Positions 12,051 through 32,700 of a DNA stretch of 64,000 nucleotides are shown here, piece by piece. The position numbers and the translations under genes were made by a program. Numbering within the stretch: the stretch's first letter is position 1; each line of letters begins with the position of its first letter. The DNA is from Macrostomum lignano (Eukaryota). Where the stretch lies: the NCBI GenBank assembly GCA_002269645.1, contig NIVC01001317.1, forward strand, positions 124,001 through 188,000, in the 5' to 3' direction. The notes under the pieces were generated by a model. It ran no database searches. It was not told where the DNA came from and saw nothing but the letters and a program-made list of their open reading frames with translations.

Positions 12051-14212
12051 CCAATGGCTCCAGTGGCAACTAACAAGCTTGTTCCTTGTGTTCGCACTAG
12101 CTACTTGCACTACTCAATCTCAGGTGATCAAGAATAATAAAAAAGTTAATAACTTGACTCATGTGCTGACCAATCAATTTCTATGCAGCAGTCAGACTAG
12201 GGGGAGGGTTACTCAAATAGAAAGGTTTGAGTTGAGTTTTGTGCATTGCATCACTCTGTGTTATGTAAGAGAAAAGGCAGTCAATGTGCAATGCTTTTGT
12301 TGATCAACTGGCCTTTGTTTGATTATCTTTTTGTCATCAAATCAGAAATTTTGTAAGTTGGCTCAAATTTTAATTGTTAATTTCAAAATTCAGCAATTCT
12401 GTATGATCAAGTGAGTTGTGTAATTTGGTCTCTAATTTGATTGCAGTGTGAATAAGCCTTTAGTATTTTTATATAGGCTGCTCGCATTCTGAATGCCAGA
12501 TCTACCATTTTATCTGTTTCAAACTGTAGAGCACCAAGATATAGCCACTATAGCAATGGCTATAGTCAATTGCTGTCTATTGTGCAGAATTTCCTTGTCC
12601 TACTCTTATTTAACTTGAATCTTGAAAACTATTTGCCATCATTCTTATAGCCAGACAAGTAGAAGCTACAGTTTTTCCAGTCACACCTTCTTGGCTACTA
12701 ATTAAAACAGTAGTGATTGTAGCAATTTTGTCTAATGACCTGTTTTGCTATACCATATAAGGATGGACCCAGTCAAGCAAATTTTGACTATAAACTTCTT
12801 TTGAAATGTTTTGTAGCTAAAATACATTGGCTTTGCGATTACATTTTCTTGAGTAACTTTGATGAAGCCATTTTCTGCATTATTTGTATATGAGCACATT
12901 TCAATCTTGCAAATCACAAACAAATCTATTAACTGTTATCCTCTGACCTTGATTTATACTAAGCTTTTTATTTGGTGTGCCATTTTTTGCAATGGTATGC
13001 ACTCTACACAGGTTGGTAAGACTTGGCATTTTAATATAGATACAAATGGGTTCTATGAACCACCATTTTAAATATGTTTCTTAAAAAGAAGCCATTTAAG
13101 AATCTTATAATAAAGCATATTTTTATAAAAAAAATAAGAATTTTTTCCTATATTGGCAGCTTATAAAACATAAGCAATATAAAAAAATTATTTTACTTTT
13201 ACCCTATAGTAAGAGAAAACTATTAAACTGAGTAGCTCATATATATTGAGTGGGAAGGTTTTATTGTGACAGCTTTTGTGTGTCTTAAGCTAATATCACA
13301 CTTGACATTTAGTGAATTAATTAATTATTAATTGGACTAGGTGTCTCAATACCTTAAAATAGCTTCATATTTTCACTAAGCTTTAGCCCTTTGTAATATA
13401 ATTTATGTTTTAATAGGCCTATTGGCTTATGTTTTATTAACTAGATCTAAAATTAAGTTGTAGTTTATTTGGACCTAACCTTGCTAAATAGCCAAAGATA
13501 ATACAAAAGTGAAATATAGAATACTTGTTAGTAAACAACTTTTTCAGTTAGTTAAAAATGCTAGTTGCTATGTAGCCTTATAATTATTGTATCCAATTCA
13601 ATGACTATAAATCCTGTGACAAATACCCATTCTTTTGCTCTTATATTATTGCAATCAGTGAGACTATAACTATATCTATTATATTTCGACTATATTCATT
13701 GTTATATCAATATGAAATTATGACAAATAACTTCACTAAACATGAAATTTAATTGCTAGTTTCTACGAGCATAGCTACCTAACAAATGAATTGGTAGGAA
13801 TACAATAAGCCAGTCCTGACAAATTTCTATATAAAACCCTTGTAAGGTCTGTCTGTCTATCTGTATTTTTTCAATCTACTAAAGTAGGTAATTCTACTAA
13901 TAAGGTACTAAGATATTGCTGGTCCATTGTTGATAATATTTTAGTGATATTTTAGCTCCATTGGCAAGATCTTTTAGGGAAAAAATTTAATTAGAGAGGA
14001 AGAGAGGCAACTTACACAGGTGTTTTAGCATGACATTTATATGTACCACTAAACATCTCAGGTTCAAGCCCTGTGTACTGCTTACAGTAGTAATCACACA
14101 ATATTAGAAAAGTAAAACTAACCAATTTTCGCAATCTTCCTTTCTCTCTTGCAGCAGTCAAGTGCCTTGCCTTTTTCCTGTCTTAATTGATCAGCTCAAC
14201 ACACACTGGCCA

Positions 14213-17052
14213 ATGAAGGTGAAGCTGCTATTGCGCAATCCGCAGGATTATCTGCGCGAAACAGCCGACGATATTCACAAATTGGCGCGTAACCCGGCGC
14301 CAGAGCTGCACCCGATGTCAGCCGAGACTGAGTATGTTCGGGCACTGAACGCGGCCAAGCTGGAGAGGATGTTTGCCAAACCGTTTCTCGGCTGTTTCGG
14401 CGATCAGGGCGACCAGCTTAGCCGCGTGTGCATGCATCCGCGAGCGCTCAGTCTGTGCCTCAGCGGCTGCGTTGACGGGCGGGTGGCCTTCTGGAATATT
14501 CCCAGGCGGAGCCGCGTGCTGCAGCTGGATGCGCACTCCGGATGCGTGCAGGTGGGTGCTCTGCTATAGTCTACAGTTACCTCTTTGTAGCACCTAACCA
14601 ACTACTGTGTCTAATAGCTATCTTTGTTTAATAGCTATCCGTGTCTAACAGCTATCCGTGTCTAACAGCTATCTTTCTCTAACAGCCATCTTTCTCTAAC
14701 AGCTATCCGTGTATCTAACAGCTATCCGTGTGTCTAACAGCTATCCGTGTATCTAACAGCTATCCGTGTATCTAACAGCTATCCGTGTATCTAACAGCTA
14801 TCCGTGTGTCTAACAGCTATCCGTGTATCTAACAGCTATCCGTGTATCTAACAGCTATCCGTGTGTCTAACAGCTATCCGTGTATCTAACAGCTATCCGT
14901 ATCTAACAGCTATCTGTTTTAACCGTGTCTAAAGGCTATTAAGCTGTCCATAACAAACACTTACTTCCTTAAACCACCAACCACCTCGCAGGGCCTGTGC
15001 TGGCATCCCGAGCAGGACCTGTTCTATTCCTGCTGCGACACCGACCGCACCTTGAAGGCTTGGCGCGTCGGCGACGACCTCACCGAATTCAGCCGGCCAG
15101 TCAGCCAGCGGCATCTGGACTTCGCTCCCCTGAATCTGGACCACCACGTCAGCAAGGACCTGTTCGCACTGTCCGGTGACGCTGTGTACTTATACGATAG
15201 CAGGCGCTCTGATCCCGTTGGCCAATGGAAATGGGGCTCGGACTCCGTGCTGCAGGCTCGATTCAATCCTACCGAGTGGCACCTGCTGGCGGCCGTTACT
15301 AAGGACAACGCGCTGTTGCTGATTGACACCCGGCAGAGGGAGCCGTTGAGGCGAATCCGTTGCGAGTTCCGGCAGAATGCGCTGTGCTGGAACCCCCAGG
15401 TGGGTTGGGTTGGTTGCTAAGGTTGCTGCGTAGTGCTTGGGAACCAGTTACACCGCTGTCACATTCCATGGTCACAACAGACAGACGGTGACACACCACG
15501 CTCACATTATATGGTCACACTCAGGGTCACATTTAACAGGTAATTGTATTTTAAGGTCACATCAAACAGACAGTCACATTCCACGGTCACATCAGATAGA
15601 CAGTCACATTCCACGGTCACATCAGATAGACAGTCACATTCCACGGTCACATCAGATAGACAGTCACATTCCACGGTCACATCAGATAGACAGTCACATT
15701 CCACGTTCACATCAGATAGACAGTCACATTCCACGGTCACATCAGATAGACAGTCACATTCCACGGTCACATCAGACAGACAGTCACATTCCACGGTCAC
15801 ATCAGATAGACAGTCACATTCCACGGTCACATCAGATAGACAGTCACATTCCACGGTCACATCAGACAGACAGTCACATTCCACGTTCACATCAGATAGA
15901 CAGTCACATTCCACGGTCACATCAGATAGACAGTCACATTCCACGGTCACATCAGATAGACAGTCACATTCCACGGTCACATCAGATAGACAGTCACATT
16001 CCACGATCACATCAGATAGACAGTCACATTCCACGATCACATCAGATAGACAGTCACATTCCACGGTCACATCAGATAGACAGTCACATTCCACGTTCAC
16101 ATCAGATAGACAGTCACATTCCACGGTCACATCAGATAGACAGTCACATTCCACGGTCACATCAGACAGACAGTCACATTCCACGGTCACATCAGATAGA
16201 CAGTCACATTCCACGGTCACATCAGATAGATAGTCACATTCCACGGTCACATCAGATAGATAGTCACATTCCACGGTCACATCAGATAGACAGTCACATT
16301 CCACGGTCACATCAGATAGACAGTCACATTCTACGGTCACATCAGATAGATAGTCACATTCCACGGTCACATCAGATAGATAGTCACATTCTACGGTCAC
16401 ATCAGACAGTCACACTTCACAGTGACATTCTGCAACTCTCAAAGCCGATTCCAATACCCAGGAGCCGTTCGTGCTGGCCACAGCTTCAGACGACTACAAT
16501 CTGTACTCTTGGGACGCTCGCCGGCTGGCTTCGCCGGCATGCGTTTACCGCGGCCACACCAACGCAGCCATGGACGTCGATTTTGCGCCAACTGGCCGAG
16601 AGCTGGTCTCAGCTAGCTACGATTGCACCGTGCGCCTGTGGGAGTCCGGCCGGAGCCAGTCCCGCGACGTCTATCACACCAAGCGAATGTACCGAGTGTT
16701 CGCCGCTCGCTACAGCCTAGACGCTCGGTTCATTGTCACGGCTAGCGCAGATTTCAATTTGCGCCTATGGAAAGCGCGCGCCTCCGAAAAGTTAGGCGCG
16801 TTAACGCCGCGCGAACGGGCGGCAGTCAATACAGCCGAGGCTTTGAAACAGAAATACGCGCACCATCCGCAGGTGAGGCGGATTGTACAGCACAGGCACC
16901 TGCCCAAGCGGCTGTACCAGGCCCAGCTAGAAATGAAAGCGATACGCGGCAAGCAGCGCCGGAAGGAGGTGAACAGGCGCGAGCACCGCGGCGAGGACAA
17001 GGAGCCATTCGTGCCTGAGAGAGATCGACACGTTCGAGGGGTCGACGAGTAA
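14213..17052 (+). CDS. DCAF13: DDB1- and CUL4-associated factor 13 / Sof1 (WD40, SSU processome); join(14213..14551,14992..15399,16462..17052), 445 aa
   Basis: Starts MKVKLLLRNPQDYLRE, then LNAAKLERMFAKPF, WD40 repeats and a C-terminal Sof1 domain (YAHHPQVRRIVQHRHLPK). Both introns are phase-0 GT-AG and keep the frame. Confidence 0.95.
14610..14925. repeat. ~19-20-bp minisatellite (ctaacagctatccgtgtat) in DCAF13 intron 1
   Basis: Tandem copies read directly in the sequence. Confidence 0.9.
15555..16410. repeat. 30-bp minisatellite (cagtcacattccacggtcacatcagataga) in DCAF13 intron 2, ~28 copies
   Basis: Exact 30-nt period is visible in successive 60-nt lines. Confidence 0.95.
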
Positions 17053-17129
17053 ACCAATGATGCAAACTCAATGACAGATTCTAAGGGATTAGTGGCATTT
17101 TTTCAAATTAGGTCTCTGGAAAACCTTCC

Positions 17130-17640
17130 ACTCAGCACTGAGTCACTGGGAAATCTCTCAGCACTGAGTCACTGGGAAATCTCCCCTCTCAGCACTGAGT
17201 CACTGGGAAATCTCTCCATGAGTCACTGGGAAATCTCCCCTCTCAGCACTGAGTCACTGGGAAATCTCTCCATGAGTCACTGGGAAATCTCCCCTCTCAG
17301 CACTGAGGCACTGGGAAATCTGCTATTCAGCACTGAGTCACTGGGAAATCTCTCCACTCAGCACTGAGTCTCTAAGAAATATCCTATTCAGCACTGAGTC
17401 ACTGGGAAATCTGCTATTCAGCGCTGAGTCACTGGGAAATTTTATTTAGCACTGAGTCACTGGGAAATCTGCTATTCAGCGCTGAGTCACTGGGAAATTT
17501 TATTTAGCACTGAGTCACTGGGAAATATCTCCACTCAGCAATGAGTCTCTAGGAAATCTCCCCACTAAGCACTGAATCACTTAGAAATCTCCACAGTCTG
17601 CACTGAGTCTCTGGGAAATGGCCGCCCACTCAGCACTCAG
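17130..17640. repeat. Variable-length minisatellite (cagcactgagtcactgggaaatct...) downstream of the DCAF13 stop
   Basis: Repeated core cagcactgagtcactgggaaat with variable linkers. Confidence 0.85.
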
Positions 17641-18260
17641 TACTGAGTTGAAGTACTAAGTTCAATACTGCTTATAGACGTCATCTGTTCGTAATATTGT
17701 GCGAATCTGCATTTGCTAAAGCACGTTTCCCTAGCTATTGTTGTCATTAATTTCTAATGCGGTGCGTTTTTTATTGCATTGGCTAATAATGATCGAGATG
17801 ACAAATTGGTTGTAAAAATATATTCTATTCACGAGTATCAGACAGTTTGGCTTGCGATCCTGTCTGAACTGCTAGAGCACTTCAATTCAACCGACTCAAA
17901 TTACTAAGAGAAAATTTGCTATTAATATCTTTTGGTTCTGTAATTTGTTTCTAAAACTCTTTTCAACACATTTTTATATTTTTGGTAGATTATTATTCTT
18001 CGTTGGATAACCAAGCTATTTGCACTACTAAAATCCAGTTTTTAGTAGTATGTAGTAGGCACTATCTATCCAGTTATAGTAGGATCGTGTGAATTTTAAC
18101 GTTATAATCTATTATTTTGTAGATTAATGAAAACTTTAATTCTAGGTGGATTTCCTAACTACACTACTGACTGGCCTCTGACTAGTAGGATTGTAAGGCA
18201 ATCTAGTTCATTTTTCCGTAAATACGAGAAACAAAAAAAACAACACAAAAATGATTCAAG

Positions 18261-20607
18261 GATCTCGTATTCCTCGGCACCGGTTCGTCATTTCCGGCGC
18301 CTCACCGGCACACGGCCTGTCTCGCTGTCAGGTTCCACGCCGACGGCGACTGCTGGCTGGTTGACTGCGGCGAGTCCGCCCAGGTTCAACTGGTCAGATC
18401 TGGCCTGGACAGGCGGCGGGTCAGCCGCATTGCCGTCACTCACCTGCACGGCGATCACACCTACGGCCTGCCCGGCCTGCTCAGCACCGTGGCGGGACGG
18501 GCAGCTCCCGACAGCACGCTGGAGGTGGTTGGACCGTCCGGCATTCGTCAGCTGCTGCGCACCAGTCTGGCTCTGACGCGAACTGACGCCCGGAACGGCG
18601 TCCGGCTGCGCCTGCGGGAGCTGGCCGGCGTGCCGTCGCTAATGCCGCCCAGTAGCCCGGGCTCGGCCGAGCTGGAAAATTTGATCCTGCGGGCTCCCGA
18701 GTTCCCGCCTCTGCCCTACGAGGATGTGACGGAGCCTGTGAGTCTGCGGCCTGGTGCATTTCAGTCTTGTTCATTTCCATTGGCTCATCATTGGCTGATC
18801 ATTCTGAACACTAGTACGTTTATTTATCTTCTGTTTATTCACGGTCTGTTTATTCACGGTCTGTTTATTCACGGTCTGTTTATTCACGATCTGTTTTTCA
18901 AGGTCTGTTTATTCACGGTCTGTCTATTCACGGTCTGTTTATTCACGGTCTGTTTATTCACGATCTGTCTTTTCACGGTCTGTCTATTCACGGTCTGTTT
19001 ATTCACGATCTGTTTATTCACGGTCTGTCTATTCACGGTCTGTCTATTCACGGTCTGTTTATTCACGGTCTGTTTATTCACGGTCTGTTTATTCACGGTC
19101 TGTTTATTCACGGTCTGTCTGTTCACGGTCTGTCTTTTCGTGACCTATTAATTCACGGTCTGTTTATTCATGACTGTTTTTACGATCTGTTTATTCAGTC
19201 TGTCTACTCACAGTCTGTTTATTCGCCGTCTGTTTATTCACGGTCTGTTTATTCACGATCTGTCTTTTCACGGTCTGTTTATTCACGTTCTGTTTATTCA
19301 CGATCTGTCTTTTCACGGTCTGTCTATTCACGGTCTGTTTATTCACGGTCTGTTTATTCACGTTCTGTCTTTTCGTGACCTATTAATTCACGGTCTGTTT
19401 ATTCATGACTGTTTTTACGATCTGTTTATTCAGTCTGTCTACTCACAGTCTGTTTATTCGCCGTCTGTTTATTCACGGTCTGTTTATTCACGATCTGTCT
19501 TTTCACGGTCTGTTTATTCACGGTCTGTTTATTCACGGTCTGTCTATTCACGGTCTGTCTATTCACGGTCTGTCTATTCACGGTCTGTCTATTCACGGTC
19601 TGTCTATTCACGGTCTGTTTATTCACGGTCTGTTTATTCACGATCTGACTATTCACAATCTGTCTATTCACGGTCTGTTTATTCACGATCTGACTATTCA
19701 CGGTCTGTCTATTCACGGTCTGTCTATTCACGGTCTGTTTATTCACGGTCTGTTTATTCACGATCTGACTATTCACGGTCTGTTTATTCACGGTCTTTCT
19801 GTTCCTGACCTGTTTATTCACGTTCTGTCTGTTCACGGTCTGTCTTTTCGTGACCTATTCATTCACGGTCTGTTCATTCACGGTCTGTTTATTCACGGTC
19901 TGTCTATTTACGGTCTGTTTATTCACGGTCTGTTTTTACGATCTGTTTATTCAAGGTCTGTTTTTTTACAGTCTGTCTATTCACGGTCTGTTTATTCACG
20001 TTCTATTTATTTACGATCTGTTTATTCGCGTCTACTTATTCCTCTTTATATATTACTGCCCGCTAGTAGGATGTGGCTATTTAAGTAGCATACAGTTAAC
20101 TTACACATTCAAAAAATGCATCTGTTTCTCTCCAACTCGCAGATCCAATGCGCTGCACCCGACGGCGGCGGCATCTGGCGAGTTTGCGACCGCCTCAGCG
20201 CCGCCCCGCTGCGCCATCGAATCCCCTGCGTTGGCTACCGCATCGACATTGGCGGGCCAGTCCTGGCTGTTCTGGGCGACACCTGCGACTCCCAGCTAGC
20301 CGAGTCGCTCTGCCGCGGTGTCGACTGTCTTGTACACGAGGCCACGGTGGGCGAGTCGCGCCGAGATTCCTGCGTGTCCAGTGGCCATTCAACTCCGGCT
20401 ATGGCCGCTGAGTTCGCCTGCCGAGTGGGCGCCAAGGCTCTGGTGCTCAATCACTTCAGTCCGCTGCTGGACAATGCCGGCGTCGCCCGTCTGCTTGCCG
20501 AAGGTCGGGCAGCCGCGGCCGGCCGTCTGCCGGTGTTTGCGGCCGACGAGCTGCGCGTCTTCCAGCTGACTGATCAGGGAGGGCTGGTGTGCTCTGATCC
20601 GCACTGA
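18261..20607 (+). CDS. ELAC1: Short-form RNase Z (ELAC1-like metallo-beta-lactamase); join(18261..18737,20143..20607), 313 codons with no genomic start codon
   Basis: Motifs DLVFLGTGSS, LVDCGE, THLHGDH (HxHxDH), HRIP, LGDT, HEAT, HST, NHFS and AADE. Donor gtgagt at 18738; acceptor cgcag at 20142. In-frame TGA at 18252-18254 and no in-frame ATG before 18261. Confidence 0.85.
18830..20030. repeat. 15-bp minisatellite (ctgtttattcacggt) filling the RNase Z intron, with an internal ~235-bp higher-order duplication
   Basis: Tandem units read directly. A variant block near 19135-19370 recurs near 19370-19510. Confidence 0.9.
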
Positions 20608-20884
20608 TCAGGGAGGGCTGGTGTGCTCTGATCTGCACTGATCAGGAAGTGCTGGTGTGCTCTGATCCGCACTGATCAGGGAGGGCTGGTGTGCTCTGAT
20701 CCGCACTGATCAGGGAGGGCTGGTGTGCTCTGATCCGCACTGATCAGGGAGGGCTGGTGTGCTCTGATCCGCACTGATCAGGGAGGGCTGGTGTGCTCTG
20801 ATCCGCACTGATCAGGGAGGGCTGGTGTGCTCTGATCCGCACTGATCAGGGAGTGCTGGTGTGCTCTGATCCGCACTGATCAGA
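20570..20884. repeat. 34-bp tandem repeat (ctgatcagggagggctggtgtgctctgatccgca), ~9 copies, overlapping the RNase Z stop codon
   Basis: Unit starts at 20570 and 20604. The stop TGA at 20605-20607 lies at the start of unit 2. Confidence 0.95.
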
Positions 20885-21028
20885 TGGCGTAATGATGCAG
20901 TAGCAATCGCTCTGTGTATGAGCAAAAAGATGTAGATAATCAGTATGCATGAGCAGTATGTATGAGCAAATAGCTTACGAGCTCTTGCAAAGGTAATATA
21001 TTCGGCCTGTAACTTTCCAGTTCGTATT

Positions 21029-21034
21029 AATAAA
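21029..21034 (+). promoter_or_regulatory. Candidate poly(A) signal AATAAA for the RNase Z transcript
   Basis: Canonical hexamer downstream of the 3' repeat. Positional inference only. Confidence 0.3.
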
Positions 21035-21361
21035 TGTTACTTTCATTCATTAAGTCAGCTTACAGATAAACGCCTTTAACTGTACACTTACTGTATCTGA
21101 TCATTCATTCCAATTAAATGTCGAGGAGCAGTACTTATATTGATATCGTATTTATTGTACTTATTGATTTTTCCTAAGCTGATTTTCTACAGATTTCTTT
21201 CAGTATATTTAGTTCCCTCAAGTGCCTATCTTTCACATTTTTACTTCAAGCTCTACGATGTACTCATGCCAATAAATCACTTGGCCCTAATCGCAATAAA
21301 TGGTCCTCTTAATTATAAAATTTGCTTTCGGCTAGTCGTTAAAATCCTTTGTGGTATCAAC

Positions 21362-22146
21362 GTACAGTAGTACAGGCTATCAATGTACAGTAGTGTAGGC
21401 TATCAATGTACAGCAGTGCAGGCTATCAATGTACAGCAGTGCAGGCTATCAATGTACAGTAGTACAGGCTATCAATGTACAGCAGTGCAGGCTATCAATG
21501 TACAGCAGTGCAGGCTATCAATGTACAGCAGTGCAGGCTATCAATGTACAGCAGTGCAGGCTATCAATGTACAGCAGTGCAGGCTATCAATGTACAGCAG
21601 TGCAGGCTATCAATGTACAGTTCAAAGTACAGTAGTGCAGGCTATCAATGTACAGCAGTGCAGGCTATCAATGTACAGTTCAATGTACAGCAGTGCAGGC
21701 TATCAATGTACAGTAGTTCAGGCTATCAATGTACAGCAGTGCAGGCTATCAATGTACAGTAGTGCAGGCTATCAATGTACAGCAGTGCAGGCTATCAATG
21801 TACAGCAGTGCAGGCTATCAATGTACAACAGTGCAGGCTATCAATGTACAACAGTGCAGGCTATCAATGTACAGCAGTGCAGGCTATCAATGTACAACAG
21901 TGCAGGCTATCAATGTACAACAGTGCAGGCTATCAATGTACAGCAGTGCAGGCTATCAATGTACAGCAGTGCAGGCTATCAATGTACAGCAGTGCAGGCT
22001 ATCAATGTACAGCAGTGCAGGCTATCAATGTACAGCAGTACAGGCTATCAATGTACAGCAGTGCAGGCTATCAATGTACAGCAGTGCAGGCTATCAATGT
22101 ACAGCAGTACAGGCTATCAATGTACAGCAGTGCAGGCTATCAATGC
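21362..22146. repeat. 23-bp minisatellite (caggctatcaatgtacagcagtg) directly upstream of EXOSC3
   Basis: Roughly 33 tandem units ending about 10 nt before the ccgcag acceptor at 22156. Confidence 0.95.
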
Positions 22147-22165
22147 ACACCCGCAGCAATCCACA

Positions 22166-23628
22166 ATGGAAGTTGCCGACGCTAAAAAGCTCATCAATCG
22201 CGACCCCGATGAAGACTTCGGCGAGGAGTCCATGGAGGAGGGCGAAGAAGCCGACGATGCCGCCGACGGCGACGTCGAACGGCTGCTGCTGCCCGGCGAC
22301 TTGGCCTTCAGCGAGCCGGCCGGCTCCGATGCCAAGTGCGTGCTGGGCGTGGGTCTCCGGGCGCTATTAAGCAACGACGATTCTATTGAGTTCGAAGTTC
22401 GAGCCACTCGGTCAGGCTACCTGCGACAGCGCGGCCGCAGCTTCTGGCTGGACTGCCCGGGTGGTCGATATCAGCCGGCGCGCGGCGACTGCGTCATCGG
22501 TGTGGTGGCCCGCCGGTCTATGGGCGACGCAGTGCTGGTGAGTGATGGTGGTGCTGCTGCTGCTGCTGGCCTGAAGACAGCTAGGCAGACAGATAGGCAC
22601 TAAAGAAATTCATTAAAGCAGACACTGAGGCAAACACTGAGACAGGCACTGAGACAGACACTGAGACAGACACTGAGACAGACACTGAGACAGACACTGA
22701 GACAGTCACTAAAACAGGCACTGAGGCAAACACTGAGACAGGCACTGAGACAGATACTAAGACAGACACTGAGACAGACACTGAGACAAACATTGAGACA
22801 GACACTGAGACAGACACTGAGACAGACATTGAGACAGACACTGAGACAGACACTGAGACAGACATTGAGACAGACACTGAGACAGACACTGAGACAGACA
22901 TTGAGACAGACACTGAGACAGACACTGAGACAGACACTGAGACAGACACTGAGACAGACACTGAGACAGACATTGAGACAGACACTGAGACAGACACTAA
23001 GACAGACATTGAGACAGACACTGAGACAGACACTGAGACAGTCACCTTAGGCAGGCCGCACATAAGGCGGACAGACGCACACAAAGTGACTGAGTCACAT
23101 CAGACAGTCAGACAAGCAGTGAGTGAGTCATACTACAAGCTGCACGCAACCCCATCGCAGGTGGACATCGGCAGCTCTGAGCCGGCCAGCCTCAGCTTGC
23201 TCAGCTTCGAGAACGCCACCAAGCGCAACCGGGCGGATGTCCGACTTGGCGACTTGGTCTACGCCCGCCTGGCCCGCTGCGACCCCGGCCTCGAGCCCGA
23301 GCTCGTCTGCGTGGACTCGAACGGCCGGTCGGACACCCTGGGCGTTGTCGGCCGCGACTCCGGGACGCTGGTTGTTGTGCCGCCGTCGCTTGCCAGACGC
23401 CTGCTGACCGATAAGCGGCGACTGCTGGGCCTGCTGGATCAGCTGGGCAAATGCGAAGCCACCGTTGGCCTGAACGGCCGCCTGTGGCTCTGCGGCTCGT
23501 CCTGGCCGCACACAGTTGCCATGACCGGTGCAGTGGCCTCGTTTCACCAGCGCCCGGACGAGGAGTGCCAAAAATTGGTGGCCGAAATGCAGCGGACTTT
23601 GGGCCTTGGCAACGGCGTTCGGAGCTGA
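22166..23628 (+). CDS. EXOSC3: Exosome complex component RRP40; join(22166..22537,23161..23628), 279 aa
   Basis: YQPARGDCVIGVV, VDIGSSEPASLSLLSFENATKRNR, VRLGDLVYAR, EPELVC and VGLNGRLW (S1 + KH domains). Donor gtgagt at 22538; acceptor cgcag at 23160. Confidence 0.93.
22617..23045. repeat. 12-bp minisatellite (gacagacactga) in the EXOSC3 intron
   Basis: Tandem units read directly. Confidence 0.95.
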
Positions 23629-24144
23629 TCGCCTGTGAATGGTTTCCATGGTAACGCCCGTATTTCTTCGATATGTTTTGTAGGGACAGCCAGTTAGCCA
23701 ACCTGGGGGGACAGAGCAGCGACTGTCTGGCTCCGCGACTCCTGATTCGATTCCGTGCGCTATCGTCCGTCTCCATGGTAACTGCTGCCGGGATGCTGTT
23801 TCTTTTGGCAACACATTTATATTTACTGTTCCCATAGCAACGGCATTCGGTTTCTTTGGCGACTGTTTATCTGTATCAATAATTGTCATCTAGACCATCG
23901 CTGCGTTCAGCGTTTCATCTCAGCAGTTCAAGTCTGTTTTACGCTTGTATCCCATTATCAAACTTATTAAAATGCATTTCGTACGCTAGCCCAAAACACA
24001 AGTGTGAGACTGCAGCTTGCTTAATTCATTGACTTGATAAGATCACAGTGTCTAACTAAGACTGTAGCGTTTTTGTTTCATTTCAGCTGTTTATTTCGAA
24101 TTTTCTGTTTGGTTCCCAAGATTGCATTGTAGTGGAGCTGAGGT

Positions 24145-24520
24145 GTCGGAAGTTGTGACTGTTGCGGAAGTTGTGACTGTTGCGGAAGTTGTGACTGTTG
24201 CAAAAGTTGTGACTGTTGCAGAAGTTGTGACTGTTGCAGAAGTTGTGACGGTTGCGGAAGTTGTGACTGTTGCAGAAGTTGTGACTGTTGCAAAAGTTGT
24301 GACAGTTGCGGAAGTTGTGACAGTTGCGGAAGTTGTGACTGTTGTGGAAGTTGTGACTGTTGCAAAAGTTGTGACTGTTGCAAAAGTTGTGACGGTTGCG
24401 GAAGTTGTGACTGTTGTGGAAGTTGTGACTGTTGCAAAAGTTGTGACTGTTGCAAAGTTGTTCAGGTTGTGGAAGTTGCGACGGTTGCGGAATTTGTGAC
24501 GTTTGCGGAAGTGGTGTCGG
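24145..24520. repeat. 18-bp minisatellite (gttgtgactgttgcggaa) between the convergent EXOSC3 and CCDC113 3' ends
   Basis: About 20 tandem units. Confidence 0.9.
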
Positions 24521-28890: not shown

Positions 28891-29759
28891 AGGCAGCAGT
28901 GTGCACCTTAGAATTTTTTAGTTCTATCAACTGTGCAATTTTACTATTGTATAATTCTAGCTTTTTGGTACACTATGCTCTAATTGATAATATATATATT
29001 GCATCTCTCTTACCTTGTTAGTCTCACAAATATTTTATTCTACCTGACAATGCTCTATGTTCAGAGAAACATGGTACAAATAAAGTTCTTGTTTTATTTG
29101 CCATTGGTATCCACAAATACTCAAAAAAGGAAATGTTTTTTGTTGGCTTTGTCTTTGTAATCTTATTAAAGAAAAGAAGCCTGCCTCAATTATACTAATA
29201 AGTTTTATTCTGCTTGTAGCTGGTTTTTACTTCCATTTATTATTATTCATTCTATTGTAAATATTTAATCCATGATTATATTGTATATGAACTATTATTT
29301 TATTGTATTATTTAGAGTATCAATGTTGGTTATGTTATTAACATTTAAAAATACAAATATTCAACATATGAGTAAAATTACAAAAGTATCTATTTTTAGT
29401 TGGATTGATACTTTTTGTTGTCTTAAAAGTGCTATTGTTCATCATGACAATATATAATAGTCTAGTTTTTATCAATAGCATATTTTTGACCCAATAAAAG
29501 ACTTGAATTTCCATGAATCCTAATTGAAATGAAATGAAATTGATTGAAATAATATCCCAGCTTTGAAAAATGGTTTGTACTCAGGGTGCCAAAAATACAG
29601 GTTGATGTGTCATAGCAAAAATATGATTAGCTTTCATTTGTACCAATTGCTGCAGCTCTGCATGCCTAGCAACTGACGCAGGCTAAGCTAAACGGAAGCA
29701 ATCTGAGGCAGACAGAGCCAGTGCCCAACTCCAAGAGACTCCCCCCCCCACAAGCCCAG

Positions 29760-32700
29760 ATGCCCCTGCCCAGCAAGGCTCGCGTCTACGCAGACGCCAA
29801 TGCCGTTAGAGAGCGCGACTACTGGGACTACGAAGCCCTGGTAGTGGAGTGGGGCAACCAGGACGACTATCAGATTGTGCGCAAACTCGGCCGCGGCAAA
29901 TACTCGGAAGTATTCGAGGGTATTAACATATCCAACAACGAGAAGGTGGTTATCAAAGTGCTGAAGCCGGTTAAGAAGCGCAAGATTAAACGGGAAATTA
30001 AAATATTGGAGAATTTGAAAGGCGGAACAAATATCATCAGCTTGCACGGCATCGTGAAGGACCCGGTGTCCCGCACTCCAGCCCTGATATTTGAGCACGT
30101 TAACAACACGGATTTCAAGCAGCTTTACCAGACTCTGGTTGACTACGATATTCGGTACTATCTGTTCGAACTGTTGAAAGCATTAGATTATTGCCACAGC
30201 ATGGGCATCATGCATCGGGATGTGAAGCCGCACAATGTTATGATCGATCACGAGCACAGAAAGGTACCTGACAGGGGCGCGACATAAATTAGCTTAGCTG
30301 CAATTTTACTTTACAGCATGAAGCCAAGTTCAAAATCTTACCGTCAGGTTCAATGTCACTATCAATCTCAAAATCTCAGCATCAATCTCAAAATCTCATC
30401 ATCAATTTCAAAATTTCAGCATCAATCTCAAAATCTCAATAGCAATATCAAAATCTCACCATCACTCAAAATCGCACCATCAATCTTAAAATTTCAACAT
30501 CAATCTCAAAATCTCAGCTTCAGCCTCAAAATCTCATAATCAATCTCAAAATCTCACCATCAATTTAAAAACTTCAACATCAATCTCAAAATCTCAGCTT
30601 CAACCACTAAATCTCATAATCAATCTCAAAATCCCATAATCAATCTCAAAATCTCACCATCAATTTAAAAACTTCAACATCAATCTCAAAATCTCAGCTT
30701 CAACCTCAAAATCTCATAATCAATCTCAAAATCCCATAATCAATCTCAAAATCTCACCATCAATTTAAAAACTTCAACATCAATCTCAAAATCTCAGCTT
30801 CAACCTCAAAATCTCATAATCAATCTCAAAATCCCATAATCAATCTCAAAATCTCACCATCAATCTCAAAATCTCAATAGCAATATCAAAATCTCACCAT
30901 CACTCAAAATCGCACCATCAATCTTAAAATTTCAACATCAATCTCAAAATCTCATAATCAATCTCAAAATCTCACCATCAATTTAAAAACTTCAACACCA
31001 ATCTCAAAATCTCAGCTTCAACCTCAAAATCTCATAATCAATCTCAAAACCTCACCATCAATTAAAAAAATTTCAGCATCAATCTCAAAATCTCAATAGC
31101 AATATCAAAATCTCACCATCACTCAAAATCAATCTTAAAATTTCAACATCAATCTCAACATCTCAGCTTCAGCCTCAAAATCTCATAATCAATCTCAAAA
31201 TCTCATAATCAATCTCAAAATCTCACCATCAATTTAAAAATTTCAGCATCAGTCTTAAAATTTCATCATCAATTTCCAAATTTCAGCATCAATCACAAAA
31301 TCTCACCATCAATCTCACAATGATACCATGAAGCTCAAAATCTCAAAATAAAAACATCGAAATCTCAATGCTTATCTCAAAACCTCAGTAGCAATCTCAA
31401 AGTCCCAATAGCAATCTCAAAGTCTGAATATCCAAAATGTGTGAAAACTCAAAAATCGCAGCTCCGCCTGATCGACTGGGGCTTGGCCGAGTTCTACCAC
31501 GCAGGCCAAGAGTACAACGTACGGGTGGCGTCCCGCTACTTTAAAGGTCCCGAACTGCTGCTTGATTATCAGGTAGGCCCAGACTAAGGTGCAGTTTGTA
31601 TTGCGTTTGTGCCAGGATATCCTAATTTTATTATCTTGCAAAGCTCGCCATCTTAAAGAAGGTCAACTGTCACGTGTATAAAATCGGAAGATCTTTCCAT
31701 AAAAACGCTTTCGCCCTTTATACAATCGCTTCCAAGCCTTCATAAAAACCGTTTCCATGTTCCAACCCTTCAAAGAACCGTTTCCATGTTCCAACCCTTC
31801 AAAGAACCGTTTCCATGTTCCAACCCTTCATAAGAACCGTTTCCATGTTCCAACCCTTCAAAGAACCGTTTCCATGTTCCAACCCTTCATAAAAACCGTT
31901 TCCATGTTCCAACCCTTCATAAGAACCGTTTCCATGTTCCAACCCTTCATAAAAACCGTTTCCATGTTCCAACCCTTCAAAGAACCGTTTCCATGTTCCA
32001 ACCCTTCAAAGAACCGTTTCCATGTTCCAACCCTTCATAAGAACCGTTTCCATGTTCCAACCCTTCAAAGAACCGTTTCCATGTTCCAACCCTTCATAAA
32101 AACCGTTTCCATGTTCCAACCCTTCATAAGAACCGTTTCCATGTTCCAACCCTTCATAAAAACCGTTTCCATGTTCCAACCCTTCATAAAAACCGTTTCC
32201 ATGTTCCAACCCTTCATAAAAACCGTTTCCATGTTCCAACCCTTCATAAAAACCGCTTTCATGTTCCAAACCCGATTCTACTCACTCCCTCCCATAGATT
32301 TTCTTCCACCCTTCATAGAACCGCTTCCATGTTTTAACCATTGTCATATTGTCGGTTCTCACTCAATTGTAAAGTTCCGCCTCCTCGCGCCGCCCCTCCA
32401 GATGTACGACTACTCACTGGACATGTGGAGCCTCGGCTGCATGTTCGCCTCAATGATCTTCAAGAAAGAGCCGTTCTTCCACGGTCAGGACAACTACGAT
32501 CAGCTTGTCCGCATCGCCAAAGTGCTGGGCACTGACGATCTGTACGCCTACATTAACAAGTACCAGATTGTGCTGGACCCGAGATTCAACGACATCCTGG
32601 CTAAGCACAGTCGCAAGCGTTGGGAAAGATTTGTGCACAGCGGCAATCAATATCTGGTCAGTCCGGAGGCGCTGGACTTCCTTGACCGGCTGCTGCGCTA

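What the first reader, a model, noticed from the sequence alone, without database searches (positions are those of the whole stretch)
18240..18300. RNase Z gene has no start codon of its own: Met1 may come from a trans-spliced leader AUG
Seen: the conserved N-terminus DLVFLGTG begins at 18261, immediately after an AG (ttcaag|gatctc). An in-frame TGA sits at 18252-18254. The ATG at 18251 is out of frame and stops after ~37 codons. Established: flatworm spliced-leader exons end in AUG, which can act as the initiator, and RNase Z proteins start M-x-(L/V)-x-FLGT. SL-AUG + GAT gives exactly MDLVFLGTG. Inference: translation depends on trans-splicing. Alternatives are one extra G (true sequence MIQDLVFLGTG; assembly error or frameshift allele) or an unseen upstream cis micro-exon. 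AAG is a less common acceptor than CAG, so these remain live.
Basis: partly seen in the sequence, partly recalled or inferred. Interest (0 to 1): 0.78.

Follow-up and report, generated by a model that had tools for sequence, protein, structure and literature searches.

The report
RNase Z gene borrowing spliced-leader AUG
This flatworm (Macrostomum lignano) RNase Z gene really has no start codon of its own and almost certainly takes its first AUG from the trans-spliced leader, which is a sound example of a mechanism already known in flatworms rather than something new.

Summary
GAT (Asp, first residue of DLVFLGTG) starts at 18261 directly after ttcaAG. An in-frame TGA lies at 18252-54. The ATG at 18251 is in the +1 frame and stops after 37 codons.

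The window is Macrostomum lignano scaffold NIVC01001317.1. The gene is GenBank PAA69499.1 (Mlig031295g2, 313 aa, "partial").

Evidence for the spliced-leader (SL) AUG reading:
- The M. lignano SL ends in ATG.
- Three homeologous copies all carry AAAAATGATTCAAG|GATCTC, although they differ elsewhere.
- A 43%-identical paralogue has the same layout with a canonical CAG|GAC.
- The transcript-based annotation cuts gene models at peaks of SL reads, and its 5'-partial CDS starts exactly at these acceptors.
- Solved RNase Z chains align from their residue 2.
- The three copies differ by 13 synonymous and 3 non-synonymous codon changes, so the frame is under selection.

The extra-G or assembly-error rival is effectively refuted. 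One concrete upstream cis exon candidate exists (ATG 18127..18192|GTAAGG), but it is AT-rich and expected by chance.

I could not reach SL-bearing reads directly. The mechanism is known from Schistosoma (Cheng 2006) and has been noted for Macrostomum, so interest is modest.

Side note: this RNase Z copy lacks the tRNA-binding flexible arm.

The parts
17053..18260 (+). Intercistronic region/outron between the DCAF13 stop and the RNase Z acceptor. It contains a 31/54-bp minisatellite (17131-17619) and an AT-rich unique part. It would be removed by trans-splicing.
   Evidence: No AATAAA or ATTAAA in it. 23 of 731 alignment columns vary among the three copies.
18251..18253 (+). Out-of-frame ATG (+1 relative to RNase Z) opening a 37-codon dead-end frame. 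It lies in the outron, so it is absent from the trans-spliced mRNA.
18252..18254 (+). In-frame TGA three codons upstream of Asp, which closes the RNase Z frame on the 5' side.
18259..18260 (+). AG of the inferred SL trans-splice acceptor (attcAAG|G). It is an AAG acceptor without a pyrimidine tract.
   Evidence: The annotated CDS starts at the next base in three copies. The reported motif is YTNCAG (PMC8629364).
18261..18737 (+). RNase Z exon 1, 159 codons, DLVFLGTG...EDVTEP, including THLHGDH. It ends before the GTGAGT donor at 18738.
18738..20142 (+). Intron (GTGAGT...CTCGCAG), mostly a 15-bp minisatellite (18830-20027).
20143..20607 (+). RNase Z exon 2 with TGA stop. The spliced product is identical to PAA69499.1 (P0122). 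The last ~12 residues and the stop lie in a 34-bp minisatellite (20569-20883).
18127..18192 (+). Rival only: a candidate upstream cis exon, ATG...ATT|GTAAGG. A 68-nt intron would join it in phase to 18261, adding MKTLILGGFPNYTTDWPLTSRI.
   Evidence: GC3 is 32% against 75% for the CDS. Such a candidate arises by chance with P = 0.15-0.31. It is not in the annotation.
14168..17052 (+). Upstream same-strand gene, DCAF13/Sof1 (WD40, 460 aa). In copy L001 it has the same transcriptional-unit number as the RNase Z gene.
22157..23628 (+). Downstream same-strand gene, RRP40/EXOSC3 (282 aa). Its annotated start lies directly after cccgCAG|. The SL AUG is in frame, and its own ATG is at 22166.

Best explanation
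The gene is an ELAC1-type (short) RNase Z of Macrostomum lignano. Its genomic coding sequence begins at codon 2. The pre-mRNA is probably a polycistronic unit running DCAF13 - RNase Z - RRP40. It is trans-spliced at attcAAG|GAT (18260|18261) to the 35-nt spliced leader CGGTCTCTTACTGCGAAGACTCAATTTATTGCATG. The 3'-terminal AUG of the leader is its only AUG. It lands in frame directly before GAT and acts as the initiator, giving MDLVFLGTG... (314 aa). Without trans-splicing no RNase Z can be made, because the frame is closed by TGA 18252 and the only nearby ATG (18251) is out of frame.

Shown: the sequence anatomy, its identity in three copies, the same architecture in an old paralogue, purifying selection on the frame, and an annotated CDS start at the acceptor.

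Inferred: that SL reads map here, and that the ribosome uses the SL AUG.
For: - Anatomy.
- Organism and gene identity: (PAA69499.1, NIVC01001317.1).
- SL sequence ending in ATG and the trans-acceptor motif: PMC8629364.
- No other ATG in the SL, and SL + exon translates to MDLVFLGTG.
- Three copies on separate contigs share AAAAATGATTCAAGGATCTC, while the flank differs by SNPs and indels.
- Paralogue B (43% identity) starts cccctgCAG|GACCTGATCTTC = DLIFLGT, is also 'partial', and does so at three loci.
- Annotation method: units are cut at SL-read peaks, then TransDecoder is run (PMC5730564). A 5'-partial ORF with an in-frame stop 9 nt upstream is only possible if the transcript model begins at 18259-18261.
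- Other annotated starts also follow acceptors: RRP40 CAG| and Yippee tttCAG|.
- DCAF13 is flagged TRANSSPLICED and shares unit number 031651 with RNase Z g3.
- 13 synonymous against 3 non-synonymous codon changes among the copies.
- Query residue 1 aligns to residue 2 of 1Y44 and 3ZWF, and bacterial homologues read M-E-L-x-FLGT.
- SL AUG as initiator has been shown in Schistosoma mansoni (Cheng et al. 2006 JBC 281:733, as cited in PMC9851317 and PMC12582326). It is also noted for Macrostomum SLs (PMC10468722).
Against: - I saw no SL-bearing read or cDNA across the junction. No transcript fragment of this gene turned up in the protein collection, which includes Logan assemblies, and none in the metagenome contigs.
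- The acceptor is AAG, preceded by an A-rich stretch rather than a pyrimidine tract. It fits YTNCAG only partly.
- SL-read evidence in the annotation can multi-map among near-identical copies. L001's RRP40 has CTG in place of CAG yet the same annotated start. So the three copies are not three independent RNA observations.
- 'Partial' status alone does not prove dependence on the SL AUG. RRP40 and Yippee are also 5'-partial but have their own ATG.
- The SL AUG has U at -3, a weak Kozak context.
Confidence: 0.85

Rival explanations
1. An upstream cis exon supplies the start. ATG 18127...18192 would be spliced (donor GTAAGG, 68-nt intron, same AAG acceptor, phase 0) to 18261, giving a 22-residue extension MKTLILGGFPNYTTDWPLTSRI-DLVF...
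For: A phase-compatible ORF with a GTRAG donor exists. It is identical in all three copies. The annotation pipeline would cut at an SL peak even if some cis-splicing also occurred.
Against: GC3 is 32% against 75% for the CDS, and the candidate lies in 30%-GC non-coding-like sequence. Dinucleotide shuffles give at least one such candidate in 15-31% of trials. The RNA-seq-based annotation has no such exon at any of the three loci and calls the CDS 5'-partial. Paralogue B has no counterpart. The family's N-terminus is M-x-L-x-FLGT with no extension.
Confidence: 0.07
2. Sequencing or assembly error, or a frameshift allele. The true sequence has one G, so ATG 18251 is in frame (MIQDLVFLGTG).
For: Deleting one G gives a plausible RNase Z start in an A-rich Kozak-like context.
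Against: GG is present in three separately assembled contigs that differ at nearby positions. UniRef models from an earlier annotation start at DLVFLGTG, not MIQ. Paralogue B has no such ATG. Purifying selection acts on the downstream frame in all copies. An out-of-frame ATG within 10 nt is unremarkable in AT-rich sequence.
Confidence: 0.02
3. The gene is not translated from codon 2. It could be a decaying, non-functional copy, or translation could start at a non-AUG or internal codon.
For: There is no start codon. The protein lacks the flexible arm. The acceptor is atypical.
Against: 13 synonymous against 3 non-synonymous changes among three copies, and all catalytic motifs are intact. The only near-cognate codon after the stop is AAG, a poor initiator. 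The first internal Met lies after the HxHxDH motif.
Confidence: 0.05

Closest known systems
Flatworm SL 3'-terminal AUG used as initiator methionine (Cheng, Cohen, Ndegwa & Davis 2006, J Biol Chem 281:733; 'slORFs' of PMC9851317)
   Same: The leader exon ends in AUG. The acceptor sits directly before codon 2 of a conserved ORF that has no AUG of its own. Translation therefore depends on trans-splicing.
   Different: The mechanism was shown experimentally in Schistosoma mansoni, where more than 40 cDNAs need the SL AUG. For M. lignano I found only remarks that the SL's final ATG is a likely start codon (PMC10468722), and no paper treating this gene. Here the evidence is genomic and annotation-based only.
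ELAC1 / short-form RNase Z (PDB 3ZWF human ELAC1, 1Y44 B. subtilis, 2CBN E. coli ZiPD)
   Same: Metallo-beta-lactamase fold signature. HxHxDH, the HEAT and HST motifs and the C-terminal His are all conserved. Best PDB match is 3ZWF at E = 1.5e-39.
   Different: It lacks the ~50-residue flexible arm/exosite, which corresponds to ZiPD residues 153-201. It therefore may not process pre-tRNA like canonical RNase Z. Paralogue B (388 aa) keeps the arm.
SL-resolved operons of M. lignano (Wudarski 2017; Ustyantsev & Berezikov 2021)
   Same: Same-strand neighbours DCAF13 - RNase Z - RRP40. DCAF13 is flagged trans-spliced and shares a transcriptional-unit number with RNase Z. The repeat-adjusted spacing is below 1 kb.
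   Different: The raw spacers are long (1.2 and 1.5 kb) because of minisatellites. I did not see the polycistronic precursor itself.

Membership tests
SL-AUG-initiated ORF (flatworm type) | The organism's spliced leader exon ends in AUG | tested here: met
   The organism was identified as M. lignano. The published SL is CGGTCTCTTACTGCGAAGACTCAATTTATTGCATG (PMC8629364). It has a single ATG at positions 33-35. No SL RNA gene lies in the window.
SL-AUG-initiated ORF (flatworm type) | An AG acceptor lies immediately 5' of the ORF, so the SL AUG is in frame | tested here: met
   AG at 18259-60 and GAT at 18261. SL + exon translates to MDLVFLGTG..., 314 aa. The acceptor is AAG, a partial fit to YTNCAG.
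SL-AUG-initiated ORF (flatworm type) | No genomic in-frame AUG can start the conserved protein | tested here: met
   In-frame TGA at 18252-54. The first in-frame Met is residue 128. Homologues align from their residue 2.
SL-AUG-initiated ORF (flatworm type) | SL-bearing transcripts are joined at this acceptor | tested here: inconclusive
   The evidence is indirect only. The GenBank 5'-partial CDS starts at 18261 in an annotation whose gene boundaries come from SL-read peaks. No reads or cDNAs were reachable.
SL-AUG-initiated ORF (flatworm type) | The protein's N-terminal Met is decoded from the SL AUG | not testable with these tools
   Needs N-terminal proteomics, Ribo-seq or a reporter assay.
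RNase Z short form (ELAC1) | HxHxDH and the other metal-ligand, HEAT and HST motifs | tested here: met
   H61-L-H63-G-D65-H66, H184, D205, H224-E-A-T, H241-S-T and H263 are invariant in alignment A1. PDB hits 3ZWF, 2CBN and 1Y44.
RNase Z short form (ELAC1) | Flexible arm/exosite with GP motif that binds the tRNA | tested here: not met
   A 54-column gap (A1 columns 229-282) is unique to P0122. ZiPD residues 153-201 are unmatched. That this segment is the exosite is from my recollection of Schilling et al. 2005.
RNase Z short form (ELAC1) | Pre-tRNA 3' endonuclease activity | not testable with these tools
   Needs a biochemical assay.
SL-resolved operon | Adjacent same-strand genes in one transcriptional unit, with the downstream gene trans-spliced and repeat-adjusted spacing <1 kb | tested here: met
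   Same strand. Mlig031651.g2 (DCAF13, TRANSSPLICED) and g3 (RNase Z) share a unit number. Spacer is 1208 nt minus a 489-nt minisatellite, about 720 nt. The precursor RNA itself was not seen.

The most novel reading that the evidence does not exclude
Both ELAC1 paralogues of M. lignano (43% identical, so an old duplication) begin at the same Asp codon directly after a trans-splice acceptor. If this is inherited, RNase Z has depended on the SL AUG since before the paralogues diverged, and trans-splicing is a fixed, obligatory gate on its translation. In addition, the copy in this window has lost the tRNA-binding flexible arm yet remains under purifying selection in three copies. It sits in an operon-like unit with two other RNA-processing genes (DCAF13/Sof1 and RRP40), which suggests a re-purposed, arm-less RNase Z with a non-tRNA substrate.
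Probability: 0.4. Interest if true: 0.45.

Novelty: new member of a known kind. Interest (0 to 1): 0.3.

Why it matters
It is a clean, checkable case in which a conserved housekeeping-type enzyme cannot be translated unless its mRNA is trans-spliced.

It also explains why GenBank lists this protein, and many other M. lignano proteins, as 'partial'. Gene finders and proteome sets for flatworms should add the SL-derived Met rather than treat such genes as truncated or frameshifted.

It adds nothing new mechanistically. The SL AUG initiator has been known in flatworms since 2006.

Tried and rejected
- **Transcripts carrying the SL.** I searched for N-terminal fragments, including Logan RNA assemblies, with M + exon 1. 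Only distant ELAC1 fragments came back. An exact SL-junction 28-mer found nothing in the metagenome contigs.
- **Orthologues from other flatworms.** The nearest non-Macrostomum hits, P0004 and P0006, turned out to be ordinary genes with their own ATG and no SL. Three further protein searches with paralogue B failed on the server.
- **Per-gene TRANSSPLICED flag for the RNase Z gene.** I looked in supplementary tables of four papers. Only the DCAF13 neighbour was found.
- **SL RNA gene in the window.** None.
- **Extra-G or assembly error.** Rejected on the three copies, the earlier gene models and the paralogue.
- **Upstream cis exons.** I enumerated every phase-compatible ATG...|GT in 17053-18258. 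There are three candidates, and only one has a GTRAG donor. It is judged to be chance.
- **Non-AUG initiation.** Only AAG is available between the stop and Asp.

Full report
**Observation.**
- The sequence is ...acaacacaaaaATGattcaAG|GATCTCGTATTCCTCGGCACCGGT...
- GAT (Asp) begins at 18261, directly after the AG at 18259-60.
- In that frame the upstream codons read K-*-F-K, with TGA at 18252-54.
- The frame then runs DLVFLGTGSSFPAPHRH...THLHGDH... with no Met until residue 128.
- The ATG at 18251 is in the +1 frame and ends after 37 codons.
- GC content steps from 30% to 68% exactly at 18261.
- Of the 20 AG dinucleotides between 17900 and 18330, only this one yields the RNase Z ORF when placed after a leader ending in ATG.

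**Gene and organism.**
- Exon 1 is 18261-18737, ending before the donor GTGAGT.
- The intron is filled by a 15-bp minisatellite.
- Exon 2 is 20143-20607, after ctcgCAG.
- The 313-aa product is identical to GenBank PAA69499.1, 'hypothetical protein BOX15_Mlig031295g2, partial', from Macrostomum lignano.
- The window is NIVC01001317.1:124001-188000, so the junction is at record position 142260|142261.
- The best solved relatives are human ELAC1 (3ZWF, E = 1.5e-39), E. coli ZiPD and B. subtilis RNase Z. Query residue 1 aligns to their residue 2.
- In a nine-sequence alignment the bacterial and animal homologues read M-E/K/W-L/I-x-FLGT. The only thing missing from the window's protein is Met1.

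**Is the missing ATG an artefact?** No.
- Two further near-identical copies lie on other contigs: L001 (Mlig031651g3) and L002 (Mlig017331g1). Both carry the identical AAAAATGATTCAAGGATCTC.
- Those copies differ from the window at an A/G SNP 13 nt upstream of the ATG, in the length of an A-run, and at 23 of 731 aligned flank columns overall.
- UniRef gene models from an earlier annotation also start at DLVFLGTG, not MIQ.
- Across the three copies there are 13 synonymous and 3 non-synonymous codon changes. The frame that opens at Asp is therefore under purifying selection, and the gene is not decaying.

**Comparative test.** M. lignano has a second ELAC1 paralogue (P0003, 388 aa, 43% identity; three loci, L003-L005).
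- It is also annotated as 'partial' and begins DLIFLGT.
- Its genomic sequence is gccgcccctgCAG|GACCTGATCTTC, a canonical acceptor directly before the same Asp codon.
- Two old paralogues thus share the architecture 'acceptor, then codon 2'.
- One caveat applies. In paralogue B a 25-bp minisatellite upstream happens to place an in-frame ATG 21 codons before Asp. An unspliced B transcript could in principle start there.

**Link to the spliced leader.**
- The single M. lignano SL is CGGTCTCTTACTGCGAAGACTCAATTTATTGCATG. About 30% of genes are trans-spliced and about 15% lie in operons. The enriched trans-acceptor motif is YTNCAG (PMC8629364).
- The ATG at the 3' end is the only ATG in the leader, and SL + exon 1 translates to MDLVFLGTG.
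- The GenBank annotation comes from a pipeline (TBONE) that cuts transcriptional units at peaks of SL-containing reads and then runs TransDecoder (PMC5730564).
- A 5'-partial ORF can only be called when no in-frame stop lies upstream in the transcript. Here TGA lies 9 nt upstream, so the transcript model must start at 18259-18261, which is the acceptor.
- The same pattern holds at other annotated starts I checked. RRP40 starts right after cccgCAG|. A Yippee gene starts one base after tttCAG|. Paralogue B starts after CAG|.
- DCAF13 in the window does not start after an AG.
- That is four of five starts at an AG, far more than the 1/16 expected by chance at each start.
- A supplementary table flags the DCAF13 neighbour as 'Mlig031651.g2 {TRANSSPLICED}', and the RNase Z copy on that contig is Mlig031651g3. 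The two genes therefore carry the same transcriptional-unit number.
- One caveat applies. In L001 the RRP40 acceptor is CTG rather than CAG, yet the annotated start is unchanged. SL reads evidently multi-map among copies, so the three copies are not independent RNA evidence.

**Rivals.**
- *Extra G or assembly error.* Excluded for practical purposes, as shown above.
- *Upstream cis exon.* Enumerating every ATG-opened frame in 17053-18258 that reaches a phase-0 GT gives three candidates. Only one has a GTRAG donor: ATG 18127...18192|GTAAGG. It would use the same AAG acceptor through a 68-nt intron and add MKTLILGGFPNYTTDWPLTSRI. Its GC3 is 32% against 75% for the CDS. Dinucleotide shuffles produce at least one such candidate in 15-31% of trials. 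It is absent from the annotation and has no counterpart in paralogue B or in the family. I keep it at about 7%.
- *Non-translation or non-AUG start.* This is unlikely given the selection on the frame, and because AAG is the only near-cognate codon available.

**Weak points of the favoured model.**
- I could not reach any SL-bearing read or cDNA.
- The acceptor is AAG behind an A-rich tract rather than a pyrimidine tract.
- The SL AUG has a poor -3 base.

**Comparison with what is known.**
- The flatworm SL 3'-terminal AUG is an established initiator. [quoted passage not shown] 2006, as summarised in PMC9851317).
- All reported flatworm SLs end in ATG (PMC12582326).
- Wiberg et al. [quoted passage not shown]
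- This locus is therefore a new, well-supported member of a known kind. It is already implicit in GenBank as a 'partial' CDS.

**Seen in passing.**
- The window's RNase Z lacks the ~50-residue flexible arm/exosite. This shows as a 54-column gap unique to it, with ZiPD residues 153-201 unmatched. All catalytic motifs are kept, and paralogue B retains the arm.
- The gene sits between DCAF13/Sof1 and RRP40 on the same strand, making a trio of RNA-processing genes.
- Minisatellites fill the introns and spacers. The RNase Z stop codon and its last ~12 codons lie inside one of them.

**Verdict.** Novelty is low and interest is modest (0.3).

Noticed in passing
window 20143-20607 (deletion point near 20240-20250); compare L003: The RNase Z encoded here lacks the ~50-aa flexible arm/exosite (GP motif) that canonical RNase Z uses to bind tRNA. 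It keeps all catalytic motifs and is under purifying selection in three copies. The paralogue (P0003, 388 aa) retains the arm.
   Followed up: partly
window 14168-23628 (+): There is an operon-like same-strand trio of RNA-processing genes: DCAF13/Sof1 (14168-17052), RNase Z (18261-20607) and RRP40/EXOSC3 (22157-23628). In copy L001, DCAF13 is g2 (TRANSSPLICED) and RNase Z is g3 of the same transcriptional unit. No AATAAA or ATTAAA lies between the DCAF13 stop and the RNase Z acceptor.
   Followed up: partly
window 22150-22168; L001:8118-8130: The RRP40 annotated CDS starts right after cccgCAG| (22157). The SL AUG would be in frame three codons before RRP40's own ATG (22166), giving MQST-MEVAD. 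In homeologue L001 the acceptor reads CTG rather than CAG, yet the annotated start is the same, which suggests multi-mapped SL reads.
   Followed up: partly
window 20569-20883: A 34-bp minisatellite (9 copies) begins inside the RNase Z CDS. The last ~12 residues (TDQGGLVCSDPH) and the TGA stop are encoded by the repeat. Older gene models end 6 residues earlier.
   Followed up: no
window 14606-24516: The introns and spacers of this gene cluster are packed with minisatellites of periods 12, 15, 18, 19, 23, 30, 31 and 34 bp. Several end within a few bases of a trans-splice acceptor and contain CAG in each unit, for example the 23-bp array 21355-22149 just before the RRP40 acceptor.
   Followed up: no
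window 29755-29765: The ATG of a CK2-alpha-like kinase (29760) directly follows cccAG|. If this AG is a trans-splice acceptor, the mRNA would carry two tandem in-frame AUGs (SL AUG plus the gene's own).
   Followed up: no
window 14140-14216: DCAF13 has a strong acceptor, ctttctctcttgCAG|, at 14154/14155. The SL AUG would be out of frame there, would stop at TGA 14188, and would sit upstream of DCAF13's own ATG at 14213. The annotated 5'-partial CDS start (14168) does not follow an AG.
   Followed up: no
L003:2700-3000 (also L004, L005): Paralogue B has a 25-bp minisatellite (cctcagccaccccatgagaatcgcc) running up to 20 nt before its acceptor. One repeat places an in-frame ATG 21 codons upstream of Asp (L003:2938). 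Each unit also carries a CTCAG acceptor-like site.
   Followed up: partly
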